Counted from the stretch's first letter, positions 1,820-62,308 are shown. The stretch is 64,000 nt of DNA from Leucoraja ocellata (GCA_036785375.1 JAWMAR010000070.1:4464001-4528000); one strand, 5' to 3'. The notes: a model not told the origin generated them from the letters alone. Numbers and translations are program-made.

Positions 1820-1910
1820 CTTAGAGTCTCTTGTGAACACCGCGGTTGAGATACTCCAGATCACAAGCAGGAGAAAGAACATCCAGCGCCCCACTTCCCA
1901 TGAGATGTAA
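1820..1910 (-). CDS. Gene A TM exon SYISWEVGRWMFFLLLVIWSISTAVFTRDSK
   Basis: 91 nt, phase 2-0; hydrophobic helix with E and R near its N-terminus; donor GTAGGT. Confidence 0.88.
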
Positions 1911-4900
1911 CTGGGCAAAGGTCAAGAAATACAGAGTCAATGGGAGGAAACGAGACGGTTAATCTTTGAAGCATTTACCTGTTATTTGCTTCATAATCTT
2001 GGTGAAGTGAAGCGGGGCGAAGCGGCAGCGTCAGTGGAGACCATCTTTGTAAAATAACATGTGTTGGACTGGGAGGGGGGGGGGGGGGGACAACAGATGA
2101 TCACCAATTGTTGACCTCATTGCTGGGGCATGACTATAAGACTGGGAATGAGAGACTACGCGGTTAAATGGATTCAGAGAAGACAGATAAATAAGATGAG
2201 TTGGGGCAGTGAATACAAAACAGATGGACACAAAATGTTGGAGAAAAAAAGCGGGAGAGGCAGCATCTCTCTGGAGAGAAGGAATGCGTGAAGTTCCGGG
2301 TCGAGACCCTTCTTCAGACTGAGAGTCACGGGAGAGGGAAACTGTGGATGTGGAAGGATGCAAAGAACAGTGTGATACCATGGAAGAAAGAAAATGCAGC
2401 TGCAAGGAAGTTTATAATAAAATCCATTTGGATAGGCAGGAATAATAAAAACGGATCAATTCCAATAATGGATGGGAGATGGGCAATAAAAATTCTTCAC
2501 AGATTCAGCCACTCTCCTGTACACATGGGGCAATTTACAACTGGCTCATCTTTGGGAGCTGGGAGGAAACTGGAGCACTTGAATGAAACCAACACAATTA
2601 AAGGCAAAACATGCAGACCACGCACAGACAGCTCCTAATGAACCAATGTCGTGGCGTTGTGAGACTGTGGCTCAACACTCTCACGCATTTAATGCCAGTT
2701 TCTCCCAATTAAAGCATTCCCCAATCAAAACACCAGCAAATAGTACATTGTGACTTTCATTGGAAACAGAGCATTTTACCTTGCAGAGTAATTGGATGGT
2801 ATCGAATTTTCACAATAATATTCAAGACCTGTTGGAACAGGGTAATACAAGTCAGTTTCACTGCTTTTCACTTGCAGTTTAACAAGTAGCTATGGTTTTC
2901 CGATGCAAGGAGTTGATAGGCTTAACAGACAGGGCAATGCTTCTTCTGTGTGATTTGCAGCAAATGGGAGATGTTATCATGACAAGCAAGCGTGCTGGTA
3001 ACAACTCTGGCTCCAGGTGTAGATGGCACGGTGGCGCAGCGGTAGAGTTGCTGCCTTACAGCCAGAGGCACGGGTTCGATCCTGACCACAGATGCTGTCT
3101 GCACGGAATTTGTACCTCCTCCCTGTGACCGCGTGGGGTTTCTACAAGTGCTCCAGTTTCCCCACAGTCTGAACTCTTGCAAGTGTGTTGGTTAATTGGC
3201 TTCTGTAAATTTTCCCCATGGAACTAGTGTACTGGTGATTACTGGACGTTGTGTACTCAGTGGGACGAAGAACCTGCTTCCACGATGTATCCACAAATTA
3301 ATCAAAAGGGTCCAATTTCACTTGAGAGGAGTATTGCTTGGGATGAAACATTACAGTGATGGGGAGGGGTTGGATAGAGGTTTTATAAAATTCCATGCAG
3401 AACAGGTGAGGAAGGGGGGACCTATTACAGGTGTGCAAAACTATGAGCAGCATAGACAGGGTATTTTTGGAACATTTTACAAGACAGATATGTGTAAAAG
3501 TGGAGAACATATGGGTAAGTTAAGGAGCAGGATGTTTGAAGGGTATAAATAAATATTTTTAAACCGAGAAGATAGAGGTACCTGAATTGCCTCAATGGAC
3601 GAGGTGCTGGTAAGTGGGATGAGTATTGATAGTACTGAATGGTCAACATTAACACAGTGACCCAAATGCGATACCGTCGTCTAGGAGTTAACTGTGGCCA
3701 CATTTACTGATAATTTCTGATCCCTTCACATATTTGAGTGTCGGTCATGTGGAGATGATGGAAAGTGAAAATGCTTGGACTGATGTCACTGCAAACCTAG
3801 TTTAAAGCTGTGTAAACATAAGAGGCAGTTCTAGCCGGGAAGCTGGTCTACACCAGCACTGGGAAATCTATTTATGGAGCCCAGCAACCAAGTATTGACA
3901 AATGGGCCATAATTCCATCATTTTAATCTTGATAACGTAATTAAATAACGTGCATGGATTTCAGGGTGTCGTGGGTTATTGGGAGAAGGCAGGAGAATGG
4001 GGTGAAGAGGGGAAGATAGATCAGCCATGATTGAATGGTCTATTTCTGTTTCTATCACATGTGATTTTATGAACCACCCCACCGCACTTCCCCTTCTTCT
4101 CCCCATTCCCTCCACTACTTACCAGTGCCGTTGACTTTCACCAGGAAACTACAGGGCACGTCACTGCTGGAGATGGACACGTTGACCATTTCACTGGATT
4201 TTGATCCATGTTGATTTGAGGCTGTGCAATAATATTGATGGTGCTGGTGTTTGAAGGATTGACAATGTAGATCCAGGGCATTGTTGTCTGAGATCTTTGA
4301 ATCCCCAGATGGGGTCTTTTCATACCAGCTGTAGTTAATGGGAAGGGATCCCCGGACCGACTCACAGGACACTGTCACTGAGCCCCCGAGACAAGAGACA
4401 TTGGCTGGTGACAGACACCCAAGCACAGGAACAGACACGGGTTCTGTGGGAAAGGAGAAAACAGTCAGACACTGAGTGAACATCTGAAAATCAAACACTC
4501 GCCAATATCCACCATCTCTGTATCTTCGCCAGAGCCGCCAGGTTGGAATCTGACCCATCCATCTACTTAGAGTCATAGAGGCATATAGTGTAGAAGCAGG
4601 CCAACATGTCCATCCACACTAGTTCCACCTGCCCTTGCTTAGCCCATAAGCTTCCAAACGGAAGAGACTGTGCATTTACTCGATCTATTCGTCGCGTGAT
4701 TTTGTAGCTGCCGTAAGATCATCCCTCATCCTCCTGCTCTCCCAGAAATAAAGTCCTAGTCCGCTCAATCCCTCCCTGGAGTTCAGGCACTCAAGTCATG
4801 GCAGCATCATTGTAAATCTTTTCTGCACCCAATCTTACTTGATAGCATCTTTCCTATAACATGGTGATGAATACTGACCACAGGGCGGACAAATCATCAG

Positions 4901-7900
4901 ACAATCTTCGATTCTCTTTTACATTTCAGGAATTGCCAGCAGGAAAAAGGGAGCATTGTTTATATAACTGTCGGACCCATCCCATCTACATAGATTCGTA
5001 GAGTCATACAGTAGAAACCTCGGCCTAACTTGCCCGCGCTGACCAACACGCCCAATCTACACTAGTTCCACCTGTCCTTTCTTGGCCCTTAACCCTCTAA
5101 ACATATCCTATTCATGTAACTGTCCAATATTTTCTGAAATGTTACGTTAGTACCGGCCATAACTACTTCCGTCAGCATTTCGTTTCATGGACCTACCAAC
5201 CTTTGTGTAAACACGTTACTCGCCAGGTTCCTGTTAAATCATTCCCGCCTGATATGAAAACTATGTCCTCTGGTTCCCGATTCCCCTACTCTGGGCAAAA
5301 GACTGTGTATTTACTCGATCTATTCCTCGCGTGATTTTTGTGATTTAAAATATATATATATATATATTTTTATTAGAATCAATGTACAGTAGTATAAACC
5401 GTGTTTTACATATTACATTTAGTGTAAAACTTCTTGTTTTTAATTTATTAATAGAAAAGTAACAGAAGCAAAACAGAGAAGGAGAGAGAAAGTTAAGTAG
5501 TGATATTGATAGTTCGTGAAAGAATAGATAGAAAGAACCCGTAAGGTTATAAAGCCGCAAAAAAACCGTGACCCCCCCCCCCAAAAAAATAAATACATAA
5601 ATTAGTAAATAGAAATAAAATATAGAAAATAAAATAAAATAATAAGGAAACAAAACAGAAAAAGAATAAAAGGGAGAAGGGATATACCTGCTTCATGTCT
5701 TTCCACACCCCTCACCCAGTTCTGAAACAGTTAATGTCCAGGGATATGTTGGACCATGTACTTGGAATGTCGATAAAAGGAGACCAAATCTTTAGGAATT
5801 GGTCTGCTTTACATGCTAGGACGAATCTCCTATCTTCGAGGTGTAACATTTCAGACATGCTTGAAATCCACATTTGGGTTCGTTGTTCAAGAATTTGAGT
5901 ATACGTTTTTTTGCTGTTATCAAGCCATGGTTAAGGAGAGAATTTTGGAACGAAATCACCTTAGAGCCGGCTTCCATTGTTCCAAAAATAATCAATTCAG
6001 TGTTGGGGTCCAATTCTATTTTAAACTCGCAGGATTTTTTTACCTGCTAATAAAATCACCACTCATCCTCCTGCGCTCCAAGGAATAAAGACCTAATCTG
6101 CTCAACCCCTCCCTGTATACCAAGCCCTGAAGTCATCGCAACATCCTTGTAAATCATCTCTGCTCCTTCTCCTCACAATCCAATTACCAGATTTAGACAT
6201 CTCTGTGTCTCTCCATCCTCCCAGCCGCCAGAACTACCATATCTGCCACTGTACCAGTACACAGCAGCACCATCTCCCTTTGTTTTACAATTCCAGCATC
6301 TGCAGTTAATCTTCTTTTAATCTGAAACTCTGCTTTTAATCTGAACATTCAAACACCTCATTAGTGCAACAGTATCAATTTTTTTTTAATTTCCTTGCAT
6401 AAAATTGTTGATGGTGATACTGTTGCACTAATGAGGTGTGTGAATGGCGGTATTGTAGAATAGTGTGTAGGGAGCGAATGGGGAAGTGGAATAATATAGA
6501 ACTAGTGTGACCGGTGATCGCTAGTTGGCGAGGATTGGGTGGGCCGAAGGATCCGTTTCCATGTTACATTTGTAAACTATTACTAAATATCCAGGTGAAC
6601 ATTTTTCTGTAAACTCTACAAACCGTTCACATCTTTCGTTTAATAAAGCGGCGACCAGAACTGTGCACCAGACTCTCACCTAACAAATGTTTTCCCGTTG
6701 CCAAAGTGTGGACATGAAGTCACTCATTGAGAAACCTACCTTCAGATACTTGGAGATGTACTTTAAATGTTGGTTCGCCAAGTGTAGTAATTCCACATCT
6801 GTACCATCCTGTATCTCCAGAGTGAAGATCCTCCACAGTCACAGTAAATATTCCTCGTGCCGGGTTATCTGTGATTGACACTCTTCGGCTCTGTCCATGT
6901 TTCCCATTTGTTTCCACTACATGTGTACACTGGCGACTTGTCCCACGGCACCAGTATTTTGTGTGTGAGCGGTACACTGCTGCATAGTGACAATCGATTG
7001 AGATCGCTCTTCCCACAATCCCTCGCACTTCGCTCTCAGCCCACAGTGCACCTGCAACTGAAGGAAAAATCTTTCATAAATTGAAGAGCAAAATTAGCCT
7101 TTCACAAACATACACATTAGAGTATAATGTACAGGGGAGTCTGCCCACTCAATTTCTTAACTCTGTTGAATTCCACCTAGATTGCGATGAGAGACAGATA
7201 CTATACACCGTCCCTCACCATCTGCACAGGTCGTTCCAAAGCGCTTCCCAGCCAATGTGGGTGTGAATGGTGAAGAATGATGTATTGAACACGGAGCCTC
7301 TTGCAATTGGAAGGCGCTGTCTAGGGAGTCTTGGTCAGTTGCTGCAGTGCATCGTGCAGATGGTGCAAACTGCTGCTGCTCTGCACCAGCGGGCGAGGTT
7401 GAGGATGGGGTGTCTATCATGCGCGACTCTGGAACATGACAAACCAAACACAAGTGTTCGGCGAAATTGTAGCCTAGGCCAGTGCTTCTTAAACTGATGA
7501 ATGGTTCACCCAAGGGCGAATAAAATTATTTTGGGGTAAATTAGTTAATTTATGTTTTTTGCTCATGTGACAAAATCAATTATCTATAAAATTATGCACA
7601 AAGGAAAATGCGATGATAATAACCAAAAGAACATAAGAACATTTAGTGGAGGGTTAATTAAATCTTGTATAAAGACTCAAGGGTGAATGACACTGTAATA
7701 GTTTAAGAAGAACTGGCCTTGTATAAAATTGGTCTCGCTGATGTAAACCATTCACACTCTCTTCTGGTCTTCCAACTGAGCGTCTCCACACCTACAGGGA
7801 CGTTCTTTTCAAAATTATCTTTGACAAAAGTAAGGGTTATACTTGATGGAGTGACGGCCAAGTAGATTCCAATTTAATTTTGTGAGATTACTGGAGTTTT

Positions 7901-10900
7901 ACACAAATTAACAGAACATGATCATGAAATTGTACATCCTTGGTTATAACTGATGATGGATCCAAACAGAATGAATTTGGTTTCTTTCTCTGTCTCAAAG
8001 TGCGGCAGCCAGAAAATAATTTTGATGGAATGCACTGAACCCGCAGGTATTTCTCTCATTTGCTGAAATTTCTCACCACCTCCCAGGTGAAAGCAACAGG
8101 CAATCATTTACCAGTCCCCCAAACAAACTCTCGCATTTTACACCATGAGCTCCCGGTGGCTGCAATGATGCCGTCTGCAAATAACAAGAAATCCATGAAC
8201 ATCACCTCAAAGCGAATAGCAGCAGGTTCAGGGACACGAGAAGAACACACACCTGCATTGTTGATTTCTGTCACATAACTGCACGTCCCTGCTCCTTTGA
8301 AGACTTTCACGTTGAGTATTTCACTGGATTTTGTCCCACGATTATTTGAGGCTGTGCAGTAATATTGACGGTGTTGACCTTCGAGGATTTCACAACTCAG
8401 ATCCAGTTGATTGCCAGACACGGTAGTTGAAACCCAATGCTCGTTATTTTCAAACCATGTGTAATGGATGGGAAGGGATCCACGGACAGACTCACACGAC
8501 ACTGACACTGAGCCTCCGAGATGTGAGGCATTTGCTGGTGACACATATCTGAGCACAGGAGCAGACATGGGTTCTGTGGGAATGGAGCAAACATTCAGTC
8601 ACCTGTATGAACAGTTAAAAACCAAACACGTGCTAAATCTCAGCAGCCCTTTATCTCAGCCCGAACCGTCCGGTTGACATCTCACCGGCTCATCTACATC
8701 TCTGTGAGTGTGCGAAGCCCAGAAACTGAAGAAGGTTAGAGTTATAGAGAACCGAAAGATGCCCATCACAACAGCTCATTCATGCCGACCAACATGTCTT
8801 TCTGGACCATTTCCATATGTCCACGTTTCTCCCTTATCACTCGCAATGATCCCAATCTACGCAAATATCAAAAAAATATTTTAAATGCTGCTATTCTAAC
8901 TGCCTTAACACCTTCCCCTGGCAGCAGGTTCCATATAAATATCACCCAATGTGTGGAAAATGTTGTCCCTCAGAACATATGTTGGGATGTTACGTCCCTT
9001 TAAGATAGACACAAAATGCAGGAGTAACTCGGCGGATTAGGCAGCATCTTTCGAGAGAAGGAATGGGTGACGTTTCGAATCGTGACCCTTCTTCAGCCTG
9101 AGAACCATGAGAAAGGGAGACAGAAGAGAAATGGAAGGGTACGGTGTGAAAACAAGTGATCAAAGGTGAAAATGTTTTAAAAAATGTAGAATGGATCATT
9201 GTCAGCTGAAGGGAAGGCATAGAATCAGTAAAATATAATCTGGAGGGCAGTGAAAATAATTGGAGGCTTCGGATGGGGCGGGATGGAGACAGGAGTAAAG
9301 CAAGGGTTACTTGAAGTTAGAGAAGTCAATATTCAAACCGCTGGGTTGTAAGCTGCCCAAGCGAAATATGAGGTACTGTTCCTCCAATTTGCTTTTGGCC
9401 TCACTCTGCAGGGGAGGAGGTCCGGGACAGAAAGATCAGTTTGGGAATGGGAGGGTGAATAAAGGTGTTTTGCAATCGGGATGTAGCGTAGGCCGAGGAA
9501 CACTGTGCGGAATTGTTCAGCGAAACGATCGCCGAGCCTGCGTTGGGTCTCCCATCTACTGTATCCGCTTGTTCACACCTGGAACAGCGGAAATAGTAGA
9601 GGAGGTTAGAAGAGATGCAAATGAACCTCTGACTCACCCGGAAATACTGTTGGAACCTTGGACGGAGTAGAAGCGGGATATATAGGGACTGGTGTTGCAT
9701 CTCCTGCAGTTGTAGGGGAAGGTATCTGGGGACGGGGTGGGAAAGGACGAGTTGACCAGTGAGTTGCGGAGTCTGTCGGGTTATTAGTTTGAGTCGGAAT
9801 GCAAACCTCTGACAGGGTGACATTTCATACAGTTCAGAGGCAGGGAAATGTGTTGAGCATCCCACTTGAAGTGGGTGGCCGCTCAGTGGAACAGAGCCCG
9901 CACTGGGTGAGAGCAACATGAGTGGGGTTTCCCGACCCCCGCCCGTTCCCCGCAGGTCTCTGCACTGCTGCGGAGCCTCGGGATATCGGTGCTGCCCTGA
10001 CCCTTCCCGGAGAGAACATAGATAAGGCATTTCAGTGGAGACGTCAAGTCAATCGCTGCGAAACGTACCGTCAGATACTTGGAGATGTACGTTAAATATT
10101 GGACGGTCGCCAGGTGTAGTAATTCCACAGCTGTACCATCCTGTATCTTCAGAGTGAAGATCCTCCACAGTCACAGCAAATATTCTTAGTGCGGGTATAT
10201 CTGTGATTGACACTCTTCCACTCCGTCCGTTTTGCCCATTTGTTTCCACTGAAACTCTACATGGGCGATTCCTCCCACGGCACCAGTATTTTGTGCGTGA
10301 GCGGTACGCTGCTGCATAGTGACAATCGATTGTGATCGCTCTTCCCACAACCCCTCTTACATCCCTCTCTGCCCACACTGCATCTGAAACTGAGGGGAGA
10401 AACTTTCAGATCAACCACAGATCAAACAACACTTGTTCCTCTGTGGAGCGAAGGAAATAGGCAACGTTTCGGGCCGAAACCCTTCTTCAGTCTGAAGAAG
10501 GGTTTCGGCCCGAAACGTTGCCTATTTCCTTCGCTCCATAGATGCTGCTGCACCCGCTGAGTTTCTCCAGCTTTTCTGTGTAACCTTCGATTCTCCAGCA
10601 TCTGCAGTTCCCTCTTAAACACTTGTTCCTCACCGGGATTATTAGTTTTGAGTCTGAATGCAAATTTCTGACGGGTGACATTTCATACAGTTCAGAGGAA
10701 GGGCAATGCGCTGAGTATTCCACTTGAAGTGAAAAGTGAAGTTAAATCCCACTTTTCAAGAAAGGAGCGAGAGAAAACGGGAAATTACAGAGCAGTTAGC
10801 CTGACTTCGGTGCGGGAAAGATGCCGGAGTCAATTATTAAAGAGGTAATAATGGGGTATTTGAATAGCAGTAAAATAATTAGTCCAAGTCAGCATGGATT

Positions 10901-13900
10901 TATGAAAGGAAAATCATGCCTGACTAATCTTCGGGAATTTTTTGAGGATGTGGCAAATAAAATGGACGAAGGTGAGCCAGTGAATGTCGTCTAGACTTCA
11001 AGAAATCCTTTGATAAGGTTCCGCACGGGAGACTGGTGACTAAATTGAGAGCGCATGGAAGGGTGTTGACGTGGATAGGAAATTGGTTGGCAGACAGGAA
11101 GCAAAGAGTAGGAGTGAACGGGTCCTTTTCTGAATGGCGGGAAGTGGCGAGTCAGTGGAGACGACAAGTCAATCGCTGCGAAACGTACCGTCAGATACAA
11201 GGAGTTCTACGGTAAACATTGGGAGGCCGTTAGATGTTGTAATTCCACATCTGTACCAGCCTGTATCGCCAGAGAGAAGATCCTCCACAGTCACAGTAAA
11301 TATTCCTCGTTCCGGGCTATCGGTGATTGACACTCTTCCACTCCTTCCGGGTAGCCCAATTGTTTCCACCATATCTGTACATTGGCGATTCTGCACACGG
11401 CACCAGTATTTTGTGTGTAAGCGGTACTCTGCTGCATAGTGACAATCGATTGCAATCGCACTTCCCACAACTCCTCTTACATACATCTCTCCCCACACTG
11501 CACCTGAAACTGAAGGGGAGAAACTTTCAGATGGAGAGCAAATGAACAGTTTAGTGGAAATAGATACATTTTGAAGATTACATGAAAGAAAACTTAAATA
11601 GTTCCATGATGTGTCATATTGCTTCACGGCCAATGTCTCCGGTCTGAAGTGCAGACAGTGCTGTTATTGTACCAGTTGTGTCAGTGTTCTGTCCCCGGGT
11701 CAGTACAATTAGGGTTCACTTCCCACTCCAGATCCCTGAGCAGAAACTGGGCTGGGATCGCAGTGCAGTGCTGAGGGAGCGCGGCAGTGTTGCAGGAGCT
11801 GCCTTTCAACAATCCCAGGCGGTGCCTGGCCTCTCACCCCACGAAAGACCCCACTTTGCTATTTCATTGGCGGTGACAATTTCTTCACAGCAGTTATCAG
11901 GCATCTGAATCATCCTACCACGCCCAGAGATCTGTCCTGAACTCCCATCTACCTCTTTGACGACCCTCGGACCACCCTTGATCGGACTTTGCTGCCTTTA
12001 CCTTACACTAAACGTTATTTAATTTCCATGTATCTATGCACTGTATGAGAATCGATTGTAATCCTGTATTGTCTTTCTGCTGGAGACGTCAATCAATCGC
12101 TGCGAAACGTACCGTCAGATACTTCGAGATGAACATTAAATATTGGATGGTCGGCAGATGTTGTAATTCCACATCTGTACCATCCTGTATCTCCATCCTG
12201 AAGATCGTCCACAGTCACAGTAAATATTCCTCGTGCCGGGTTATCTGTGATTGACAATCTTCCACTACGTCCGTGTTGCTCATTTGTTTCCACCAAAACT
12301 GTACATTGAAGACTCATCCCACGGCACCAGTATTTTGTGCGTGAGCGGTACTCTGCTGCATAGTAACAATCGATTGTGGTCGCTGTTCCCACAACTCCTC
12401 TTACATCCCGCTTTGCCCACAGTGCACCTGAAACTGAGGGGAGAAACTTTCAGATGGAGAGCAATGAACTGTTTAATGGAAATAGATACATTTTGAAGAT
12501 TACTTCTTCATATAAACTACTTCATCGCCTCCAATGCATTCAGAACTCAGCAGCCCGGATCATCACCCGCACCAGATCATCGGACCACATCACACCCATC
12601 CTCACTCAGCTCCACTGGCTCCCTGTGCACCACCGGATTAACTACAAGAATTTACTGCTGACCTTCAAAGCCCTAGACCACCTTGCTCCCCAATACCTCT
12701 CTGACCTGCTGCTACCATACACTCCTTCCCGGTCACTTCGTTCCTCCTCAGCTGCAATTTTAACTGTCCCCACATTTAGACTCAGCACAATGGTTGCCAG
12801 AGCCTTTGGCTGCTCTGCCCCACGTCTCTGGAACACTCTCCCACCTCCCTTCCGTCACCTGGACACTATCGATCAATTCAAATCACAACTCAAAACACAC
12901 CTGTTTAGATTAGCATACCCGACATAACTTCCACCATGTTCACCCTGATTTTAATGAGTTAAAATATTTTGTGTATTTTTTTGTTTTTTGTTTTTTGGCA
13001 ACTTAATTTTAATATTGATAATTGTATTGTGATTTTATGTCCTGTAAGGTGTCCTTGGGTGTCGAGAGNNNNNNNNNNNNNNNNNNNNNNNNNNNNNNNN
13101 NNNNNNNNNNNNNNNNNNNNNNNNNNNNNNNNNNNNNNNNNNNNNNNNNNNNNNNNNNNNNNNNNNNNNNNNNNNNNNNNNNNNNNNNNNNNNNNNNNNN
13201 NNNNNNNNNNNNNNNNNNNNNNNNNNNNNNNNNNNNNNNNNNNNNNNNNNNNNNNNNNNNNNNNNNNNNNNNNNNNNNNNNNNNNNCGCCCCATGATGTG
13301 TCATATTGCTTCACGGCCAATGTCTCCGCTCTGAAGTGCAGGCAGTGCTGTTATTGTACCAGTTGTGTCAGTGTTCTGTCCCCGGTTCAGTACAATTTGG
13401 GTCCAGATCCCTGAGCAGAAACTGGGCTGGGATCGCAGTGCGGTACTGAGGGAGCGCGGCAGTGTTGCAGGAGCTGCCTTTCAACAATCCCAGGCGGTGC
13501 CCGGCCTCTCACGCCACAGAAATACCCCACTTTGCTATTTAATTGGCGGTGCCGCCGGCTACGCTGCCAACATTCATCTCTCAACCGACACTGGGCAGGA
13601 CCCGTGTTTTTTTTAATTATCAAATAATTTATTCAATTATTAAAAATAATATTTACACTACAATAAAACAAGAACCCAGCACCATAATACCAGACAAACA
13701 AATATACTAAATACACTACTATACAACTATGTTACAATACTTGTCAAGGATGTATTCAACCGCAGGCGATGCCCAGATGTCCCGGAAATCCCCCAGGTGC
13801 CCGTGGACAGCGCCTGGTCCTTCTCGAGTCCCACCCGGACGCGGAAAGCCGACCCGTGTTTAGACATTCACCGCCGCCAATGCTTTCCAACGCCCTGACT

Positions 13901-17293: not shown

Positions 17294-17316
17294 TTTATTG
17301 ACAACAACCATTTATT
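17294..17316 (-). terminator. Tandem polyadenylation signals of gene B
   Basis: AATAAA at 17316-17311 and 17299-17294, about 200 nt after the stop. Confidence 0.7.
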
Positions 17317-17513
17317 AAGAAGCATTCTGTTGCATTATTATTCATTAATCTGTGAAACAAAATCCAGGAAATTGTATGCATATAATATAGTTTAACATGG
17401 TATAAAACTCTAAAGCAGCAGAAACCACGCAAAGGTTAAAACAATAGTTCGAAGCTGACGAAAGAAACCTTGGAAGAGGTGGCAAAAATTAAGAAGGTGC
17501 AAGCTAGCAGTCT

Positions 17514-17561
17514 TCATTGTAATTCGTGGGTCGAGTGGCGAGGTTCTGTGTCATCGCGTCT
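17514..17561 (-). CDS. Gene B terminal exon RRDDTEPRHSTHELQ*
   Basis: TTTTGCAG acceptor, phase 0 matching the TM donor; same sequence in C; followed by a 3'UTR with two AATAAA. Confidence 0.75.
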   Translation of the reverse strand, partial: RRDDTEPRHSTHELQ

Positions 17562-35757: not shown

Positions 35758-36452
35758 TGTACAACATGCTGGAGTAACTCAGCAGGACAGGTAGCATATC
35801 TGGATGAAAGGAATGGGTGACGTTTCGGGTCGAGACCCTTCTTCAGGTTAAAGTCAGGGGAGAGGGTTAAGGAATAGTAAGGTGTGAAAATGGGACAAAG
35901 GCTTTGCAGATCAAAGGACATGTAGAATAGGTCATTGTTAGCTGGGAGAAGGTAACAATAAAGTAATTAGAGATAAAACGTAGTCGGAGACCGTCAGACT
36001 GATCGGATAACTGGGAAGGGGGGGGGGGGGGGGTGTTGGATTGAGAGGGAATGCAAGGGTTGCTTCAAGTTAGATAAGTCACTGTTCACACCGCTGGGAT
36101 GTAACCAACCCAAGCGAAACATGAGGTGCAGTTCCTCCAATTTGTGCGGCAACTTACTCTGACAATGGAGGATGCCCAGGACAGGAATGTCAGTGTGGGA
36201 ATGGGAGGGAGGAGTTACCGTGTTTAGCGACCGGGGTATCAGGTAGGGGCGGACTCAACGGAGGTGTTCAGCAAAACGATCGCCGAGAAGCGAGAACAAT
36301 CGCAGGCTCAGCAATCGTTTCGCTGAACACCGCCCCCCTGTCTGCCTACCCCTACCTGATCTATCTACTGATGCCGCCTGTCACGCTGAGCTACCCCAGC
36401 AATTTATGTCTATCCTCAGTTTAAACCAGCATCTGCAGTTCCTTCCTACCTA
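35758..36452 (-). mobile_element. Penelope-like fragment with inverted terminal piece (shorter relic at about 17000-17265)
   Basis: Same endonuclease-end sequence; strand switch near 36290 with a short inverted duplication. Confidence 0.75.
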
Positions 36453-36685
36453 AAAATGAGTTGCATATCGGCAATGAAATCTGCACATGTTGGATGTGCT
36501 TAGCGCGTCAGTCAGCGTCTGTGCAGAGAAAAATAAGGCTAATAGTCAGAACAATGCCGTTGCATAATTTGGGTCTGATGGGATAGCATAGTCTGAAAGA
36601 TTAATTGAATGTCTTCCCTAGTCGCCTTTAATGTTTGGCAACAAGAGGAATATCCAGCAGTCTAATCAAAACAAATTAGACAACG

Positions 36686-36708
36686 TTTATTGACAACAAC
36701 CATTTATT
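36686..36708 (-). terminator. Tandem polyadenylation signals of gene C
   Basis: AATAAA at 36708-36703 and 36691-36686. Confidence 0.7.
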
Positions 36709-36906
36709 AAGAAGCATTCTGTTGCATTATTATTCATTAAGCTGTGGGAAAAAAATCCAGGAAATTGTATGCATATAATATAGTTTAACAGAGTATAAAA
36801 CTCTGAAGCAGCAGAAACCACGCAAAGGTTAAAACAGTAGTTCGAAGCTGACGAAAGAAACCTTGGAAGAGTTGGCAAAAATTAAGATGGTGCAAGCTAG
36901 GAATCT

Positions 36907-36954
36907 TCATTGTAATTCGTGGGTCGAGTGGCGAGGTTCTGTGTCATCGCGTCT
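36907..36954 (-). CDS. Gene C terminal exon RRDDTEPRHSTHELQ*
   Basis: 48 nt, phase 0, ends TGA. Confidence 0.75.
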   Translation of the reverse strand, partial: RRDDTEPRHSTHELQ

Positions 36955-48900: not shown

Positions 48901-51900
48901 TCAAATACAAAAGTAACACCCGAAAACAGTCATCAGGAAACCACTGCGCCCAGTTTCTCTCACGGGTGTAATGTTCTGTTGCTCAAGTTTTGATTGGCCT
49001 TACTTTTCCATATGAGAGTTGGAGACACATGGAACTGTAGATACATACATAGATACATAGATACATAGATGCATAGACAATAGGTGCCATTGCATAGACA
49101 ATAGTATGCCATTCAGCACTTCCAGCCAGCACCGCCATTCTATGTGATCATGGCTGATCATCCACAATCAGTACCCCGTTCCTGCCTTTCCCCATATCCC
49201 TTGATTCCGCCAGCCCAAATAGCTCTATCTAACTCAAAAGAATGCACCCAGTGAATCGGCTTCCACTGCCGTCTGAGGCAGAAAATTCCACAGATTCACA
49301 ACTCTCTGGTTGAAAAAGTTTTTCCTCATCTCCGTTCTAAATGGCCTATCCATTATTCTTAAACTGTGGCCCCCTGTTTCGGGACTCGCCAATATCGGAA
49401 ACATGTTAGGTACACAAAAATGCTGGGGAAACTCAACGGGTGCAGCAGCATCTATGAAGCGAAGGAAATAGGCGACATTTCGGGCCGAAACCCTTCTTCA
49501 GACTGTTTCCTGCCTCTAGCGTGTCAAATCCCTTAGTAATCTTATATGTTTATATCCCTCAATAGCAAGAAGGTCCTTCCTCACATTTGGAGTTCAAAAC
49601 TGCACCCAATATTCCAGGTGTGGTCTCACTAGGGCCATGTACAACTGCAGAAGGACTACTTTTCTCCTGTGCTCAAATCCTCTTGTTATTAAGGTCAACA
49701 TGCCACTAGCTTTCTTCACTGCCTGCTGCACCTGCATGCTTTATTTCAGTCAGTGATGAACAAGGACACCCATATCTAGTTGTACTTCTCCTTTTCCCAA
49801 CCTGACACCATCCAGAAAATAATCTGCCTTCCTGCTTTTGCTACTAAAGTGGATAACCTCACATTTATCCACATTAAACTTCATCTGCCACGCATCTGCC
49901 CACTAACACAACCACTCTCCCACTCACCACTCGCTCACTCACCACCCGCCTCCAGGTCCCTTATCGGAGAGCGTTACGAGCGTGAAATCGCACACCGCCA
50001 GATTCGGAAGCAATTTCTTCACAGCTGTTATCAGGCATCTGAATCATCCTACCACATCCAGAGATCTGTCCTGAACTCCCATCTACCTCTTTGACGACCC
50101 TCGGACTACCCTTGATCGGACTTTGCTGGCTTTACCTTACATTAAACGTTATTTCCTTTTCATGTATCTATGTGCTGTAAGAGGATAGATTGTAATCCTG
50201 TATTGTCTTTCTGCTGGAGACGTCAATCAATCGCTGCGAAACCTACCGTCAGATACTTCGAGATAAACGTTAAATATTGGATGGTCGGCAGATGTTGTAA
50301 TTCCACATCTGTACCATCCTGTATCTCCATCCTGAAGATCGTCCACAGTCACAGTAAATATTCCTCGTGCCGGGTTATCTGTGATTGACACTCTTCCACT
50401 CCGTCCGTGTTGCCCATTTGTTTCCACCAACACTGTACATTGGAGACTCCTCCCACGGCACCAGTATTTTGTGTGTGAGCGGTACTCTGCTGCATAGTGA
50501 CAATCGATTATGATCGCTCTTCCCACAACTCCTCTTACATCCCTCTTTGCCCACACTGCTCCTGAAACTGAGCGGAGAAACTTTCAAATGGAGAGAAAAT
50601 TAACTGTTTAATGGAAATAGACACATATTGAAGATTACATGAAAGAAAACTTAAATCGTTCAATGATGTGTCATATTGCTTCACGGCCAATGTCTCCGGT
50701 CTGAAGTGCAGGCAGTGCTGTTATTGTACCAGTTGTGTCAGTGTTCTGTTCCCGGTCAGTACAATTTGGGTTCACTTCCCACTCCAGATCCCTGAACAGA
50801 AACAGGGCTGGGATCGCAGTGCGGTACTGAGGGAGCGCGGCAGTGTTGCAGGAGCTGCCTTTCAACAATCCCAGGCGGTGCCCGGCCTCTCACCCCACAG
50901 AAAGACCCCACTTTGCTATTTCATTGGCGATGCCGTCGGCTACGCTGCCAACATTCATCTCTCAACCGACACAGGGCCGGATCCGTGTTTTTTTAAATTA
51001 TCTAATTATTTATTCAATTATTAAAAATAATATTTACACTACAATAAAACAAGAACCGAACACCATAATACAAGACAAATAAATATTCTAAATAAACGAC
51101 TATACTTGTCAAGGATGAATTCAACCCCAGGCGGTGCCCAGATCTCCCGGAAATCCTCCAGGTGCCCGTGGACAGCGCCTAGTCATTCTCTAGTACCACC
51201 CGGGCGCGGAAAGCCGACCCGTGTTTAGACATTCACCGCCGCCAATGCCTTTACAACGCCCTGACTGAGGACAGAGGGCGGACGAGTTACAAAAAAGTGG
51301 GTCCATTACCAGTGCTGAACTATCTACCTCTTTGGTGACCCTCGGACTACCCTTGATCGGACTTTGCTGGCCTCACCTTACACTAAACGTTATTTCCCAT
51401 TCATGTATCTATGCGCTGTAGGGATCGACTGTAATCATGTATCTGGCAGGTTAGCATGCAACAAAAAGCTTTTCTCTGTAACTCTGTACACGTGACAATA
51501 AACTGAAATTAAATTTCAGCACGACTGGGCGGCGGATCCGATAGCGGATGGAGAGAGAGTTGGCGGTGGGTGGATAGAGCGAGGACAGTGGTTCAGTCTC
51601 AGACTCCGGGGAATTGTTGGGTTTACGACAGAGTTGAGTTGGACAAATGCAGGGAATATTTGAACTGACACAATGAGTCCACAATCGTGACTTCCACCTC
51701 TGTTGTAAACACATTTTGTTAGTGTAGAATTAACTTCCTGGTGATGGTAGAACCTCTGTCCTTCGGTCCAGGTGTCTTGGAATATCTGCTCCAAATACAT
51801 TCGCTATTTTATGCCTATAATCTATCATCATGATGCAATTAGACCACGTGTTAACGGTGGTCAAACTACGAACATAGTCTAGATATTCAAATGTGATTTC

Positions 51901-52077
51901 AGATCCATCACCAGAATGCACTGAGTTCCATCTCCCCCATTACATGTCTACACACACTTAACCATCTCTGCTGTAGAAAGGGTGCACGGGACCCCAACTA
52001 ACATTGATCATTGGAATATCAAGATCTGACTTTCACTCACCGGGTAGCGAGGCGATGAGAAGAATGGGAATCCACAT
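36907..52077 (-). CDS. Gene C (spliced, complete, about 801 aa): CD300/pIgR-like, MDIR-like receptor with (V-C2)x3 ectodomain, activating type
   Basis: Exons 52077-52041, 50567-50247, 48086-47766, 46669-46355, 45208-44888, 44021-43818, 43643-43332, 41009-40689, 39389-39341, 37823-37758, 37689-37599, 36954-36907. They sum to 2406 nt. Two V exons need the downstream in-frame AG. Confidence 0.75.
37599..37689 (-). CDS. Gene C TM exon
   Basis: 91 nt; SYISWEVGRWMFFLLLVIWSISTAVFTRGSK. Confidence 0.88.
37758..37823 (-). CDS. Gene C stalk exon
   Basis: 66 nt, phase 2-2. Confidence 0.7.
39341..39389 (-). CDS. Gene C micro-exon GLEYYCENSIPSNYSA(R)
   Basis: 49 nt, phase 1-2. Confidence 0.8.
40689..41009 (-). 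CDS. Gene C C2b exon
   Basis: 321 nt; nearly identical to gene A C2b. Confidence 0.9.
43332..43643 (-). CDS. Gene C V4 exon
   Basis: Usual AG is now CG; the downstream in-frame AG gives 312 nt; KYWCNGTSRQC. Confidence 0.78.
43818..44021 (-). CDS. Gene C putative linker exon
   Basis: 204 nt; in-frame 6-nt deletion relative to A and B. Confidence 0.55.
44888..45208 (-). CDS. Gene C C2a exon
   Basis: 321 nt; donor GTGAGT. Confidence 0.88.
46355..46669 (-). CDS. Gene C V2/V3-hybrid V exon
   Basis: Usual acceptor lost; the next in-frame AG gives 315 nt; KYWCRGWSRQC..DTGRYICG. Confidence 0.75.
47066..48560 (+). repeat. 110-bp direct repeats (47066-47175 and 48451-48560) flanking the inserted C2 exon segment
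   Basis: CTCTCAACCGACACTGGGCCGGACCC...GGATCAAAAGATAAG occurs twice with about 4 mismatches. Confidence 0.92.
47766..48086 (-). CDS. Gene C extra C2b-type exon (inserted copy)
   Basis: 321 nt, intact splice sites, near-identical to the C2b exons. Confidence 0.8.
49060..49905 (-). mobile_element. Fragmented CR1 3' region with a nested Penelope-derived insert (about 49410-49503)
   Basis: Reverse complement of the CR1 ORF2 C-terminus and 3'UTR. Confidence 0.8.
50247..50567 (-). CDS. Gene C V1 exon
   Basis: 321 nt; KYWCRGRSLQC. Confidence 0.9.
52041..52077 (-). CDS. Gene C leader exon
   Basis: MWIPILLIASLP followed by G|GTGAGT. Confidence 0.9.
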
Positions 52078-58611: not shown

Positions 58612-59430
58612 ATCGACAAAAGTGGTGAATACTGCCCATTCCGTCGATGGTTCTCACCTCCCCACCCTCGCAGGGATTTACAAGAATCGCTGCCTCAAAA
58701 GGACAGCCAGCATGATCAGAGGCCCACACAAACATGGCCACGAACCCATCTCAACCCTACCATCGGAAGACGGTACAGGAACTGAAAAACTATAATGACT
58801 AGCTTCAGAGCAGCTTCCTCCCAACAGCCATCAGGTTAGTAAACACAATAACCTCCAATAAACTCTGACCGACATAGACTAGGATGGGATTAATTTTGTC
58901 TTTTGCAATATTATTGTGTGCTTATTTNNNNNNNNNNNNNNNNNNNNNNNNNNNNNNNNNNNNNNNNNNNNNNNNNNNNNNNNNNNNNNNNNNNNNNNNN
59001 NNNNNNNNNNNNNNNNNNNNNNNNNNNNNNNNNNNNNNNNNNNNNNNNNNNNNNNNNNNNNNNNNNNNNNNNNNNNNNNNNNNNNNNNNNNNNNNNNNNN
59101 NNNNNNNNNNNNNNNNNNNNNNNNNNNNNNNNNNNNNNNNNNNNNNNNNNNNNNNNNNNNNNNNNNNNNNNNNNNNNNNNNNNNNNNNNNNNNNNNNNNN
59201 NNNNNNNNNNNNNNNNNNNNNNNNNNNNNNNNNNNNNNNGATATCGGATATATGATATAGTATTATAATATAATATATTAAATATCACACACATACTTAC
59301 ACATACACACTGAACTTTTTATCGTTTAAATTATTTACATAGTCCTATGTTTATATATTCTGTTATGCTGCTGCAGGTAAGAATGTCATTGTTCTGTATG
59401 GGACATGTGACAATAAAACACTTTTGATTT
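58612..59430 (+). mobile_element. Second Rex1-like 3' fragment spanning the gap
   Basis: KVVNTAHSV.G..LPTL..IYK.RCLKR.ASMI. Confidence 0.65.
58928..59239. other. Assembly gap
   Basis: Run of N. Confidence 1.
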
Positions 59431-59717: not shown

Positions 59718-60035
59718 CTAAGAAACAACGCTGGCATAAATTGGCTGTGCAGAATCTTGCAGGTTGCCAGGGGACCTGGCATTGCCCTTTCGGGTACGGC
59801 TTGGTAAGTTAACATTTGCATAGGTGACATTGTCCTCACTGGTGACAGGATACTTTCCTTGTGAGATGACGTCGTCTTTGTTGGTAACGGACTGTCCCAT
59901 CCTCGATCGCCTTTGAAACTGCACGGCTGCATACATGATCCCGCTGTCATTGTTGGCCAACTGGTCAGCTGCCTCGTCGTCTCGGGAATGCTGCAGATTG
60001 ACACGAGCAGGTCTTTCTCGCCGTGTTGGTATTTC
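59718..60035 (-). CDS. Gene D terminal cytoplasmic exon with two ITIMs and one ITIM-like motif
   Basis: TTCTGTTAG acceptor, 318 nt. IMYAAV and VTYANV fit (I/V/L/S)xYxx(L/V/I); PIYASV is C-terminal and ITIM-like. Confidence 0.85.
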   Translation of the reverse strand, partial: EIPTRRERPARVNLQHSRDDEAADQLANNDSGIMYAAVQFQRRSRMGQSVTNKDDVISQGKYPVTSEDNVTYANVNLPSRTRKGNARSPGNLQDSAQPIYASVVS

Positions 60036-62308
60036 CTAACAGAAACAAAAATGAAGATCCAATTTACAATCTGACGGAAGGCGGAAGGCGTAGTCTACTC
60101 TTCCAAGTCAATAACACAGCGAGTTTGCGGATGTTTCCACTAGTGGGGGTGTCAGACTAAAAGGACGTACCTTTAGAAAGGAGACGAGAAGGCATTTCTT
60201 TAGTCAATGGGTGGTGAATCTGTTGAATTCATTGCCAAAAAAAGGCTGCGACGAGGGACAAAAGTGCGAAAACGCGCCCCTCCAGATTCAGGGACAGTTT
60301 CTTCCCAGTTATTATCAGGCAACTGAACTGTCCTATCAACAACCACAGAACTATCGTCTACCTCATTAGGGACCCTCGAACTATTTTTAATCGGACTTTA
60401 GTAGACTTTATCCTGCACTAAACATTATTCCTTTTATCCTGTATTTGTATCTGTGGACGGAGTACTTTGTAATCACGAAAAGTCTTTCCCCTGACTGAAT
60501 AGCACAGAATGAAACGATTTTCACGGTACCTAGTACACTGCACACCGTGACAATAAACCAAACCAAACCAAACCTCATCATCGTTCAGCCATGGAAGTTC
60601 CTTCGGGATATTTATTATAGCCCTGCTCCTGCTGTCATGCTTAGAGCAGAAGATTGTGGCATTCTCTCTTCAGTAATTAGCTTCAAAAAGCGGAGAGGCT
60701 GCTGTTAACATTGAAATTTTGCAAGAAATTGACAAATCTATCGCAATGTATTTAATGTGACAAAAACATCATTCAACTTGGTGGTCACTAATACAGAGTT
60801 AATTTGTCAAATGTTCAAGTGTGATCAAGTTCAGTTGTGGCACGTAAATTGGTATATGTTTCCCCACAAACACTGTTCACAGCAGCGCTAATACCATATA
60901 ACCATATAACAATTACAGCACGGAAACAGGCCATCTCGACCCTTCTAGTCCGCGCCGAACACGTTTCTCCCCTAGTCCCATCTACCTGCGCTCAGACCAT
61001 AACCCTCCATTCCTTTCCCGTCCATATAACTATCCAATTTATTTTTAAATGATAAAAACGAACCTGCCTCCACCACCTTCACTGGAAGCTCATTCCACAC
61101 CGCCACCACTCTCTGAGTAAAGAAGTTCCCCCTCATATTACCCCTAAACTTCTGTCCCTTAATTCTGAAGTCATGTCCTCTTGTTTGAATCTTCCCTATT
61201 CTCAAAGGGAAAAGCTTGTCCTCATCAACTCTGTCTATCCCTCTCATCATTTTAAAGACCTCTATCAGGTCCCCCCTTAACCTTCTGCGCTCCAGAGAAT
61301 AAAGACCTAACTTATTCAACCTATCTCTGTAACTTAGTTGTTGAAACCCAGACAACATTCTAGTAAATCTCCTCTGTACTCTCTCTATTTTGTTGACATC
61401 CTTCCTATAATTAGGCGACCAAATTGTACACCATACTCCAGAATTGGCCTCACCAATGCCTTGTACAATTTTAACATTACATCCCAACTTCTATACTCAA
61501 TGCTCTGATATAAAGGCCAGCACACCAAAAGCTTTCTTCGCCACCCTATCTACATGAGATTCTACATTCAGGGAACTGTGCACAGTTATTCCCAGATCCC
61601 TCTGTTCACCTGCATTCTTCAATTCCCTACCATTTACCATGTACGTCCTATTTTGATTTGTCCTGCCACGATGTAGCACCTCACACTTATCAGCATTAAA
61701 CTCCATCTGCCATCTTTCAGCCCACTCTTCCAACTGACATAAATCCCTCTGTAGACTTTGAAAATCTACTTCATTATCCAAAACCATAATGAATGCTAAG
61801 ATATCAGGAGGGGGTCAGGTTTAAGAGATAATAAAGTATGAAAAACCATGACCACTGATCAATCAACTGGCTTCCCAGACTAGTTTTTTTTCTGATTGCA
61901 CATGGATATTTGGGAACAAGAGGCACGTCTGTGTAGCAATTAGCAAAGCCTTTCTCTAACATTAGATACAAGGCTAAACTTATTCTGCAGCTGCCAATCG
62001 CAATTAAAGATTGACGTCACTCCAATGACTAGTCAAGTAAAATATCATGGACGCTTTTAAGTAAAGTCTGGAAAAACACAAGAGGGAAAATAAGGATTGC
62101 AAGGATATGCTGATGTGCTTCCATGTACAGAGGTATTTGGAGGTTTGTGTATAGCATGGATACTGGGGAGGGCTGGTGGGGCTGAATGTCCTGTGTAGTC
62201 CCCTAAAACCTGATTTTGAAAAGATTTAAACATTCAATGAATCCATATTTCATGTCCTTACCTGGGTTCCATTTGCCCTGTCTCTGCGTTGTGTGTTGCA
62301 CTTGGATT
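59718..62308 (-). CDS. Gene D 3' end (5' part outside window): inhibitory receptor cytoplasmic tail with ITIMs
   Basis: Micro-exon 62308-62262 (SKCNTQRRDRANGTQ, donor GTAAGG, phase 0) splices in frame to terminal exon 60035-59718 (EIPTRRERP...IMYAAV...VTYANV...PIYASVVS*). Confidence 0.8.
60891..61787 (-). mobile_element. CR1 LINE of a second subfamily, ORF2 C-terminus
   Basis: LQRDL..WQMEFNADKC, ERVQRRFTRM, FFTQRVVAVWNELP. Confidence 0.93.
62262..62308 (-). CDS. Gene D 47-nt cytoplasmic micro-exon
   Basis: TTGCAG acceptor and CAG|GTAAGG donor, phase 1-0. Confidence 0.7.

What the first reader, a model, noticed from the sequence alone, without database searches (positions are those of the whole stretch)
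1820..62308. Paired activating/inhibitory cluster of six-Ig-domain CD300/pIgR-like receptors in a probable cartilaginous fish
Seen: three tandem genes mix CD300/pIgR-type V domains (B-F disulfide plus the extra KYWC-x6-C pair) with C2 domains. All have a charged TM, and B and C end in a tyrosine-free tail of about 19 aa. They lie directly downstream of a same-strand gene ending in ITIMs. Established: CD300, TREM, LILR and KIR families form such paired clusters, and a mixed V/C2 family (MDIR) is known from skate cDNAs. Inference: this is an MDIR-like locus, and these six-domain architectures (VVVC2-VC2 and VC2VC2VC2) may be undescribed. That gene D belongs to the same family cannot be shown, because its ectodomain is outside the window.
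Basis: partly seen in the sequence, partly recalled or inferred. Interest (0 to 1): 0.8.

Follow-up and report, generated by a model that had tools for sequence, protein, structure and literature searches.

The report
Skate modular Ig immune-receptor gene cluster
Three intact, tandemly duplicated skate genes encode six-domain immune receptors of a family already known from skates and rays, next to the tail of an inhibitory relative, so this is an ordinary member of a known multigene family.

Summary
The minus strand carries three ~18.5 kb tandem units (A, B, C). Each has a leader exon, six 312-321-nt phase-1 Ig exons, a 49-nt stalk exon and a 91-nt TM exon. B and C also have a 15-residue tail exon; A's lies outside the window. 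All 11 V exons have the CD300/pIgR-type extra cysteine pair, and the 7 C2 exons resemble FCRL5/CD22 domains. The TM begins with a conserved Arg, and the tail is 20 residues without tyrosine. Gene D ends with two canonical ITIMs, and its tail is 71% identical to that of a Rhinoraja V-C2 receptor.

Both assembly gaps lie outside coding exons: intron 1 of A, and the 3' flank of D.

Closest relatives (80-91% per exon) are RefSeq models from skates, mostly named 'polymeric immunoglobulin receptor-like'. One of them already has the V-C2-V-C2-V-C2 layout, so the novelty claim is weak. V-V-V-C2-V-C2 was absent among 150 cluster representatives.

Exons show 0 indels against 56 in introns, so the genes are under constraint. 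Four RNA runs gave no exon coverage, so splicing of these genes is neither shown nor refuted. MDIR sequences could not be retrieved.

The scan has noted similar clusters elsewhere in this genome. Verdict: new members of a known kind.

The parts
14780..14816 (-). Gene A leader exon (MWIPILLIASLP, donor GTGAGT, ends in phase 1)
   Evidence: matches N-termini of relatives
12113..12433 (-). Gene A Ig exon 1, V type (alternative acceptor 6 nt downstream at 12427)
11189..11509 (-). Gene A Ig exon 2, V type
10069..10389 (-). Gene A Ig exon 3, V type (query)
8253..8573 (-). Gene A Ig exon 4, C2 type a (FCRL5/CD22-like)
6740..7057 (-). Gene A Ig exon 5, V type
4123..4443 (-). Gene A Ig exon 6, C2 type b
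2780..2828 (-). Gene A stalk exon, 49 nt (GLEYYCENSIPSNYSA), phase 1 to phase 2
1820..1910 (-). Gene A TM exon, 91 nt (YISWEVGRW... TRDSK), phase 2 to 0; tail exon lies outside the window beyond a LINE insertion
33038..33074 (-). Gene B leader exon
23757..30784 (-). Gene B six Ig exons: V 30784-30464, V 29860-29540, V 28927-28607, C2a 27112-26792, V 25585-25268, C2b 24077-23757
22484..22532 (-). Gene B stalk exon (GHEYSCENSITSNYSA)
20374..20464 (-). Gene B TM exon
17514..17561 (-). Gene B tail exon RRDDTEPRHSTHELQ + stop; AATAAA at 17316 and 17299
18163..20322 (+). LINE (reverse-transcriptase ORFs) inserted antisense in the TM-to-tail intron of gene B; the same insertion in gene A covers 1-1768; absent in gene C
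52041..52077 (-). Gene C leader exon
40689..50567 (-). Gene C six Ig exons: V 50567-50247, C2b-copy 48086-47766, V 46669-46355, C2a 45208-44888, V 43643-43332, C2b 41009-40689
39341..39389 (-). Gene C stalk exon
37599..37689 (-). Gene C TM exon
36907..36954 (-). Gene C tail exon RRDDTEPRHSTHELQ + stop; AATAAA at 36708 and 36691
62262..62308 (-). Gene D cytoplasmic exon (ESKCNTQRRDRANGTQ), 47 nt
59718..60035 (-). Gene D last exon with stop: ITIMs IMYAAV and VTYANV, plus PIYASV
13069..13286 (.). Assembly gap 1, inside intron 1 of gene A
58928..59239 (.). Assembly gap 2, 478 bases downstream of gene D's stop

Best explanation
Genes A, B and C are intact, recently duplicated members of the large modular Ig-receptor family of skates and rays. 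RefSeq mostly names this family 'polymeric immunoglobulin receptor-like', and it most probably is the MDIR family described from clearnose skate. Each gene encodes a type I membrane protein of about 711-715 residues: a signal peptide, six Ig domains, a short Cys-containing stalk, a TM helix that starts with a conserved Arg, and a 20-residue tail with no tyrosine. The V domains are of the CD300/pIgR type and the C2 domains are FCRL-like.

Inferred mechanism: the ectodomain binds an unknown ligand. The boundary Arg pairs with an acidic residue of an ITAM-bearing adaptor dimer (FcR-gamma or DAP12 type), so the receptor activates the cell. Gene D, just upstream on the same strand, is an inhibitory relative whose ITIMs would recruit SH2 phosphatases.

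Shown here: exon structure, domain types, intact frames, constraint against indels, and homology of the TM and tails to annotated relatives. Inferred: adaptor coupling, ligand binding, expression, and pairing of D with A-C.
For: Tandem units of ~18.5 kb at 87-97% DNA identity. There are 18 of 18 Ig exons open, with phase-1 borders.

The exon lengths add up to an open frame from ATG to stop in B (2148 nt) and C (2136 nt). This is my arithmetic.

V exon against PDB: CD300A 69.8 bits, CLM-6 69.4 bits, and pIgR chains E 1.9e-52 over five domains. C2 exon against PDB: FCRL5 E 2.5e-37 over six domains, CD22 d6-d7 and FCRL4.

Full-library HMMER: 2343 proteins at E<=1e-3. The top hits are skate, ray and shark RefSeq models at 60-75% identity, and 24 of the 150 listed mix both domain types.

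The VGRW motif at the start of the TM occurs in 8 of the 150 listed proteins. Six of those eight run on into a short basic tail after the TM; a seventh, P0043, starts the same way but its model continues further; in P0014 the model reads on into other sequence. One tail (P0044...RRDKSEPGHSAHELQ) nearly matches the window's tail exon. P0044 also shows the same C2b - GLEYxCE stalk - TM - tail order.

Constraint: 0 indel events in 2703 aligned exon bases against 56 in 11931 intron bases, so 12.7 were expected, Poisson P = 3e-6.

D's tail is 71% identical to that of P0068, a V-C2-TM-ITIM protein.

P0166 is a 191-residue ORF on a 1028-base contig that holds leader, V, stalk, VGRW TM and tail in one frame. 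It looks like a spliced transcript of a one-V member.
Against: No RNA support for these genes. In four RNA runs (5-25% of each read, tissues unknown) the exons had depth 0 to 2.3 and no exon-exon joints. Nearly all laid reads were repeat-derived.

Pooled pN/pS among paralogous exons is 0.76 (V) and 0.88 (C2). That is compatible with diversifying selection but also with weak constraint.

The Arg lies at the very edge of the hydrophobic span and could simply be a flanking, snorkelling residue.

Akula et al. 2014 report finding no FcR-gamma chain in shark genomes (PMC4016189, passages read), so the adaptor is unidentified.

Two RefSeq models from other skates (P0004, P0006) join the last C2 exon directly to the TM exon. 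That shifts the frame and ends the protein without a TM.

D's ectodomain is outside the window.
Confidence: 0.75

Rival explanations
1. The genes mainly produce soluble six-domain proteins. Skipping the 49-nt stalk exon joins the last C2 exon to the TM exon out of frame, and the protein ends 16 residues later without a membrane anchor. The products would then act as secreted binders or decoys.
For: The direct C2b-to-TM join is in phase with the Ig exons but out of frame for the TM. RefSeq models of two other skates end in exactly that peptide (P0004 Leucoraja erinacea, P0006 Amblyraja radiata). The same reading is available in all three window copies.
Against: A 49-nt exon is easily missed by automatic annotation. 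The stalk, TM and tail exons are conserved in sequence, phase and order across batoids. The TM exon shows 1 difference in 93 exonic bases between A and C, against 33 in 629 in the flanking intron, which argues that the TM frame is used.
Confidence: 0.12
2. The three genes are young, unexpressed duplicates on their way to becoming pseudogenes. Their intactness only reflects their recent origin.
For: No exon coverage in four RNA runs. pN/pS is close to 1 in several pairs. A LINE sits in the last intron of A and B.
Against: Zero indels in 2.7 kb of aligned exon against 56 in 11.9 kb of intron, P = 3e-6. No stop codon in 18 exons. All splice sites, start codons and poly(A) signals are kept. The RNA runs were of unknown tissue and shallowly sampled.
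Confidence: 0.08
3. The receptors are the skate's working counterparts of poly-Ig or Fc receptors. They would bind IgM or IgW through pIgR-like V or FCRL-like C2 domains, rather than acting as generic paired innate receptors.
For: Domain-level similarity to pIgR D1-D5 and to FCRL5, an IgG-binding receptor. The literature says cartilaginous fishes lack PIGR, FcRL and classical FcRs, and asks how they opsonise and transport Ig (PMC4016189 and PMC13337447, passages read).
Against: No binding data. Per single domain, the V exon scores higher against CD300 (69.8 bits) than against the pIgR D1-only chains (55.3 and 46.6 bits; D1 within a full-length chain 50.2). The 20-residue tail has no room for pIgR-type sorting signals. 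The family is hugely expanded and fast-evolving, which is unlike a dedicated Ig transporter.
Confidence: 0.05

Closest known systems
MDIR (modular domain immune-type receptors) of clearnose skate, Cannon et al. 2006, Immunogenetics 58:362
   Same: Skate multigene family. [quoted passage not shown] As I recall the abstract, it has one to six domains of I- and C2-type, a charged TM in one form and ITIMs in others.
   Different: No sequence comparison was possible. The paper is not held and no MDIR-named protein came back. The genomic exon structure and the tandem layout given here may go beyond the cDNA-based description.
RefSeq 'polymeric immunoglobulin receptor-like' models of skates and rays (e.g. 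XP_078277138.1 and XP_078277136.1 Rhinoraja longicauda, XP_055511094.1 Leucoraja erinacea, XP_032898097.1 Amblyraja radiata)
   Same: 80-91% identity per exon. Same V and C2 subtypes, same leader, same GLEYxCE stalk, and the same VGRW TM or ITIM tail. The V-C2-V-C2-V-C2 layout is present in P0003.
   Different: They come from other species or paralogues. Several models are fusions or truncations (P0001, P0004, P0014, P0044). V-V-V-C2-V-C2 was not seen among the 150 representatives.
CD300 (CMRF35-like) family of mammals
   Same: The V domain with the extra C-C' disulfide gives the best single-domain PDB matches (69.8, 69.4 and 64.9 bits). The family also has paired activating and inhibitory members in a cluster.
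   Different: CD300 proteins have one V domain and no C2 domains. Here there are six domains, including FCRL-like C2.
Polymeric Ig receptor (pIgR) and the expanded zebrafish PIGR-like genes
   Same: Tandem pIgR-type V domains. Zebrafish has about 25 clustered genes with two to six domains (PMC13337447, passage read).
   Different: pIgR has only V-type domains and a long sorting tail. The skate genes interleave C2 domains and have a 20-residue tail with a boundary Arg in the TM.
FCRL family (FCRL5, FCRL4) and CD22 membrane-proximal domains
   Same: C2 exons align to six FCRL5 domains, E 2.5e-37 for the whole chain and 35.9 bits for the best domain.
   Different: FCRLs lack CD300/pIgR-type V domains and signal through their own ITAM or ITIM tails.

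Membership tests
MDIR (skate modular domain immune-type receptors) | Occurs in skates as a large multigene family | tested here: met
   Closest proteins are from Rajiformes at 80-91% per exon. There are three tandem copies in the window. Earlier scan notes list further clusters in the same genome (unchecked).
MDIR (skate modular domain immune-type receptors) | Ectodomain assembled from CD300/pIgR-like and C2/FcR-like Ig modules in varying number | tested here: met
   The definition is taken from passages of PMC3031540 and from my recall of the 2006 abstract.
MDIR (skate modular domain immune-type receptors) | Forms with a positively charged TM residue and forms with cytoplasmic ITIMs | tested here: met
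   Arg in VGRW at the start of the TM in A, B and C; two ITIMs in D.
MDIR (skate modular domain immune-type receptors) | Sequence relatedness to the published MDIR1-5 cDNAs | not testable with these tools
   Paper not held. No MDIR-named protein was returned.
CD300 | V-type domain with an extra disulfide next to the canonical one | tested here: met
   11 of 11 V exons have KYWC-x6-C. CD300A, CLM-6 and CLM-1 score 65-70 bits.
CD300 | Single Ig domain ectodomain | tested here: not met
   Six Ig exons per gene.
pIgR | Ectodomain of V-type domains only | tested here: not met
   Two (A, B) or three (C) C2-type exons per gene.
pIgR | Long cytoplasmic tail with sorting and transcytosis signals | tested here: not met
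   The tail is 20 residues.
FCRL | Ectodomain made only of FcR-type C2/Ig-like domains | tested here: not met
   Four (A, B) or three (C) V-set exons per gene.
Paired activating/inhibitory receptor cluster (functional class, as KIR, LILR, CD300) | Activating member: short tail without signalling motif, basic residue in or at the TM | tested here: met
   The Arg is at the outer boundary of the TM, not central.
Paired activating/inhibitory receptor cluster (functional class, as KIR, LILR, CD300) | Inhibitory member with ITIMs in the same cluster | tested here: met
   Gene D last exon, on the same strand, 7.6 kb upstream of gene C's leader.
Paired activating/inhibitory receptor cluster (functional class, as KIR, LILR, CD300) | Closely similar ectodomains in the two partners | not testable with these tools
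   D's ectodomain lies outside the window.
Paired activating/inhibitory receptor cluster (functional class, as KIR, LILR, CD300) | Association of the activating member with an ITAM adaptor | not testable with these tools
   Needs biochemistry. The adaptor repertoire of skates was not examined; the literature search gave nothing relevant.

The most novel reading that the evidence does not exclude
These modular receptors combine pIgR/CD300-type V domains with FCRL-type C2 domains and come in activating, inhibitory and possibly soluble forms. They could be the cartilaginous-fish solution to antibody recognition, that is the functional Fc or poly-Ig receptors that the literature says this lineage lacks. 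The fusion of the two domain types would then mark a common root of the pIgR/CD300 and FcR/FCRL lineages.
Probability: 0.08. Interest if true: 0.75.

Novelty: new member of a known kind. Interest (0 to 1): 0.3.

Why it matters
The locus gives a clean genomic picture of how a fast-evolving immune-receptor family is built in a skate. It uses interchangeable phase-1 Ig exons of about five V types and two C2 types, one shared stalk-TM-tail module, and whole-gene tandem duplication with one exon swap.

It also bears on a statement in the literature that cartilaginous fishes have no PIGR or FcRL homologues (PMC4016189 and PMC13337447, passages read). At the domain level that is not so: the V exon matches pIgR chains at E 1.9e-52 and the C2 exon matches FCRL5 at E 2.5e-37. 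This shows domain homology, not orthology.

The family itself is already described (MDIR) and is annotated in several elasmobranch genomes, so the finding refines knowledge and does not open a new field.

Tried and rejected
RNA evidence: the look-up of sequencing runs found no RNA holder.

MDIR comparison: the 2006 paper and a 2010 review are not held. Four literature searches on MDIR terms returned a single relevant paper. No MDIR-named protein appeared.

Second stalk exon: a 90-nt phase 2-2 candidate between the stalk and TM exons (C 37847-37758) has good splice sites and is conserved in all three copies. It has no counterpart in 169 relatives, so I do not count it as an exon.

Gene D's TM exon: tblastn with P0068 found none between 62309 and 64000.

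Adaptor literature: one search returned nothing relevant.

Species: a 90%-cluster search gave no hit above 69% identity in the 122-387 residue range, so the species was not pinned down beyond 'a skate'.

Pseudogene reading: considered, and rejected as the main reading on the indel contrast.

Supplements: the supplementary files of PMC4016189, which might list which shark data were screened, were not seen.

Full report
WHAT IS THERE. A self-comparison of the window shows three tandem units of about 18.5 kb (roughly 1768-18163, 20322-37550 and 37547-53685) at 87-97% DNA identity. All genes read on the minus strand. A tblastn with the window's own Ig exons finds exactly 18 Ig-like segments, six per unit, and none elsewhere or on the plus strand. 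Every one is an open frame bounded by AG and GT in phase 1, with a length of 309-321 nt divisible by three. With the upstream one of two tandem acceptors, the one RefSeq models of relatives use, the lengths are 312-321 nt.

DOMAIN TYPES. Pfam calls V-set for the 7 V exons of genes A and C and Ig_2/Ig_3/Ig_C17orf99 for their 5 C2 exons. Gene B's exons were not put through Pfam; they are 84-98% identical to their counterparts. All 11 of 11 V exons have the canonical B- and F-strand cysteines plus KYWC-x6-C.

Against solved structures, one V exon matches pIgR chains (E 1.9e-52, all five domains hit). As a single domain it matches best to CD300A (69.8 bits), CLM-6 (69.4) and CLM-1 (64.9). Next come NKp44, TREM2, TLT-1 and the IgM Fc receptor FAIM3. 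One C2 exon matches FCRL5 (E 2.5e-37 over six domains), CD22 d6-d7 and FCRL4. Within the window the V exons fall into four positional types plus one orphan, 65-77% identical between types. The C2 exons fall into two types, 53-56% identical between types.

SMALL EXONS. I found the small exons with the help of relatives.

- Leader: each gene has its own leader exon (MWIPILLIASLP, donor GTGAGT) at 14816, 33074 and 52077.
- Stalk: after the last C2 exon comes a 49-nt exon (GLEYYCENSIPSNYSA in A and C), running from phase 1 to phase 2.
- TM: next is a 91-nt exon (YISWEVGRWMFFLLLVIWSISTAVFTRGSK), running from phase 2 to phase 0.
- Tail: in B and C a last exon encodes RRDDTEPRHSTHELQ and a stop, with AATAAA about 250 nt further on.

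The exon lengths add up to 2148 nt (B) and 2136 nt (C), both divisible by three, giving about 715 and 711 residues.

In A and B a LINE lies antisense in the TM-to-tail intron. That puts A's tail exon outside the window.

ARCHITECTURES. A and B are V-V-V-C2a-V-C2b. C is V-C2b-V-C2a-V-C2b. C's second exon sits in a 1.3 kb segment that is 96% identical to the segment holding the C2b exon.

The last exon has two canonical ITIMs, IMYAAV and VTYANV, and a terminal PIYASV that misses the consensus at position -2. It is 71% identical to the tail of P0068 (Rhinoraja longicauda), a V-C2-TM-ITIM protein of this family. That is indirect support that D belongs to the family.

THE GAPS. Gap 1 (13069-13286) lies between A's leader exon and its first V exon. 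It is intronic, so the frame question does not arise. Its flanks align collinearly with B and C, and neither B nor C has an Ig exon in that intron. Gap 2 begins 478 bases after D's stop codon, with no poly(A) signal in between, so it probably lies in D's 3' UTR. I filled neither gap, and I could not test continuity with reads.

WHO ELSE HAS IT. A HMMER scan of 1.84 billion representatives with one V exon found 2343 proteins at E<=1e-3. The top hits at 60-75% identity are RefSeq models from skates (Rhinoraja longicauda, Leucoraja erinacea, Amblyraja radiata), rays (Hemitrygon, Hypanus, Mobula, Narcine, Pristis) and sharks. They are named 'polymeric immunoglobulin receptor-like', 'CMRF35-like molecule', 'Fc receptor-like protein 5' or 'uncharacterized'.

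Exon by exon, the best identities are 72-91% and all are to skate proteins, so the window comes from a skate. Of the 150 listed proteins, 24 mix both domain types. Their layouts include Vc, VVc, VcV, VcVc and VcVcVc, and an 11-domain shark model.

P0003 is V-C2-V-C2-V-C2 with a TM and three ITIM-type motifs, so that six-domain layout is already in a public annotation. V-V-V-C2-V-C2 was not among these representatives. They are 50%-identity cluster heads, so its absence means little.

Eight of the 150 carry VGRW at the start of the TM. Six of those eight run on into a short basic tail, and a seventh (P0043) starts the same way but continues further. P0044 shows C2b, a GLEYSCE... stalk, the TM and ...RRDKSEPGHSAHELQ in the same order and spacing as the window.

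ARE THE GENES ALIVE? In alignments of A with B and of A with C there are no indel events in 2703 exon bases, against 56 in 11931 intron bases. That makes 12.7 expected, Poisson P = 3e-6. Substitutions run at 3.7% in exons and 4.9% in introns. Pooled pN/pS is 0.76 for V and 0.88 for C2 exons. Between A and B the two N-terminal V exons differ more than their flanking introns (27/642 against 41/1796, Fisher p = 0.017). This pattern is what one expects of a fast-evolving receptor family whose frames are kept open.

Direct RNA evidence failed. No RNA run holds the stretch. In four raw-read RNA runs of the same species label, the reads that laid on 36800-41200 were 88-99% chimeric with unlike sequence and piled on intronic repeats. 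Exon bins had depth 0 to 2.3, and no exon-exon joint appeared. The tissues are unknown and only 5-25% of each run was read, so this neither shows nor refutes expression.

A hint that the family's TM form is transcribed comes from P0166. It is a 191-residue ORF on a 1028-base contig that holds leader, V, stalk, VGRW TM and tail in one frame. In the window the leader-to-V intron alone exceeds 1.4 kb.

HOW IT PROBABLY WORKS. This part is inferred. A short tail without tyrosine, plus a conserved Arg at the outer end of the TM helix, is the signature of receptors that signal through ITAM adaptor dimers. From my own knowledge, FcR-gamma partners such as Fc-alpha-RI, GPVI, OSCAR and PIR-A carry the Arg near the outer end. 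D, with its ITIMs, would oppose such signals.

A second possible output is a soluble form. Joining the last C2 exon straight to the TM exon keeps the Ig phase but shifts the TM frame, and the protein ends after 16 residues. Two RefSeq models of other skates end exactly so. This may equally be an annotation slip over a 49-nt exon. The ligand is unknown.

RELATION TO WHAT IS KNOWN. The family fits the description of MDIRs. [quoted passage not shown] My recall of the 2006 abstract adds one to six domains, a charged TM and ITIM forms. I could not read that paper or retrieve its sequences, so membership by sequence is untested.

The genes are not CD300 (six domains, not one), not pIgR (C2 domains present, 20-residue tail) and not FCRL (V domains present).

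Passages of PMC4016189 and PMC13337447 state that no PIGR, FcRL or FcR-gamma homologues were found in cartilaginous fishes. At the domain level the present exons, and the RefSeq names of their relatives, contradict the first two statements. Orthology is not shown, however.

Earlier notes of this scan (unchecked) list similar clusters from about 556 kb before to about 370 kb beyond this window and on other pieces of the genome. This window is therefore one sample of a very large family.

VERDICT. These are new members of a known kind, of moderate-to-low interest.

Noticed in passing
window 2780-2828, 22484-22532, 39341-39389 with 1820-1910, 20374-20464, 37599-37689: Skipping the 49-nt stalk exon joins the last C2 exon to the TM exon out of frame, and the protein ends 16 residues later without a TM. 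RefSeq models of Leucoraja erinacea (P0004) and Amblyraja radiata (P0006) end with that same peptide. This could be a soluble isoform or an annotation slip.
   Followed up: partly
window 37758-37847 (C); about 1979-2068 (A): A 90-nt candidate exon in phase 2-2 lies between the stalk and TM exons. It has a polypyrimidine/AG acceptor and a GTAAAT donor and is conserved in all three copies, but its peptide matches none of 169 relatives.
   Followed up: yes
window 12427/12433, 11503/11509, 10383/10389, 7051/7057 and the B and C equivalents: V exons have two tandem AG acceptors 6 nt apart, which would add or drop two residues (Val-Ser) at the domain junction. Gene C's fifth Ig exon has lost the upstream one.
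   Followed up: no
window 1-1768 and 18163-20322: A LINE with reverse-transcriptase ORFs is inserted antisense at the same point of the TM-to-tail intron in genes A and B but not in C. The A/B duplication therefore came after the insertion. Another RT fragment (60972-61787, minus strand) lies in gene D's last intron.
   Followed up: partly
window 10618-13067 versus 28966-31408: Between genes A and B the two N-terminal V exons have diverged more than the introns around them (27/642 against 41/1796 differences, Fisher p = 0.017). This hints at diversifying selection on the membrane-distal domains.
   Followed up: partly
window 47168-48443 versus 40082-41366 and 3517-4800: A 1.3 kb segment carrying the C2b exon is present a second time in gene C, at 96% identity. 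It takes the place that a V exon holds in A and B and so creates the V-C2-V-C2-V-C2 layout. An earlier scan note (s1-884924) made the same point.
   Followed up: partly
window 37241-37387, 37535-37681, 39593-39886, 40475-40621: Intronic repeat fragments attract hundreds of RNA reads that run on into unlike sequence in all four runs. They are copies of dispersed, transcribed repeats and not signals from this gene.
   Followed up: no
protein P0044 (XP_078277019.1, Rhinoraja longicauda): This RefSeq model, named TRIM69-like, fuses a RING/B-box/coiled-coil/SPRY-like N-terminal part to a C2-V-C2 activating receptor of this family. It is probably a merged gene model.
   Followed up: no
C2 exons, e.g. 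window 8253-8573 and 4123-4443: Each C2 exon has two cysteines beyond the canonical pair: one in the D/E region and one in the 16-residue linker that closes the exon. The stalk exon holds another Cys (GLEYYCE). These could form extra intra- or inter-chain disulfides.
   Followed up: no
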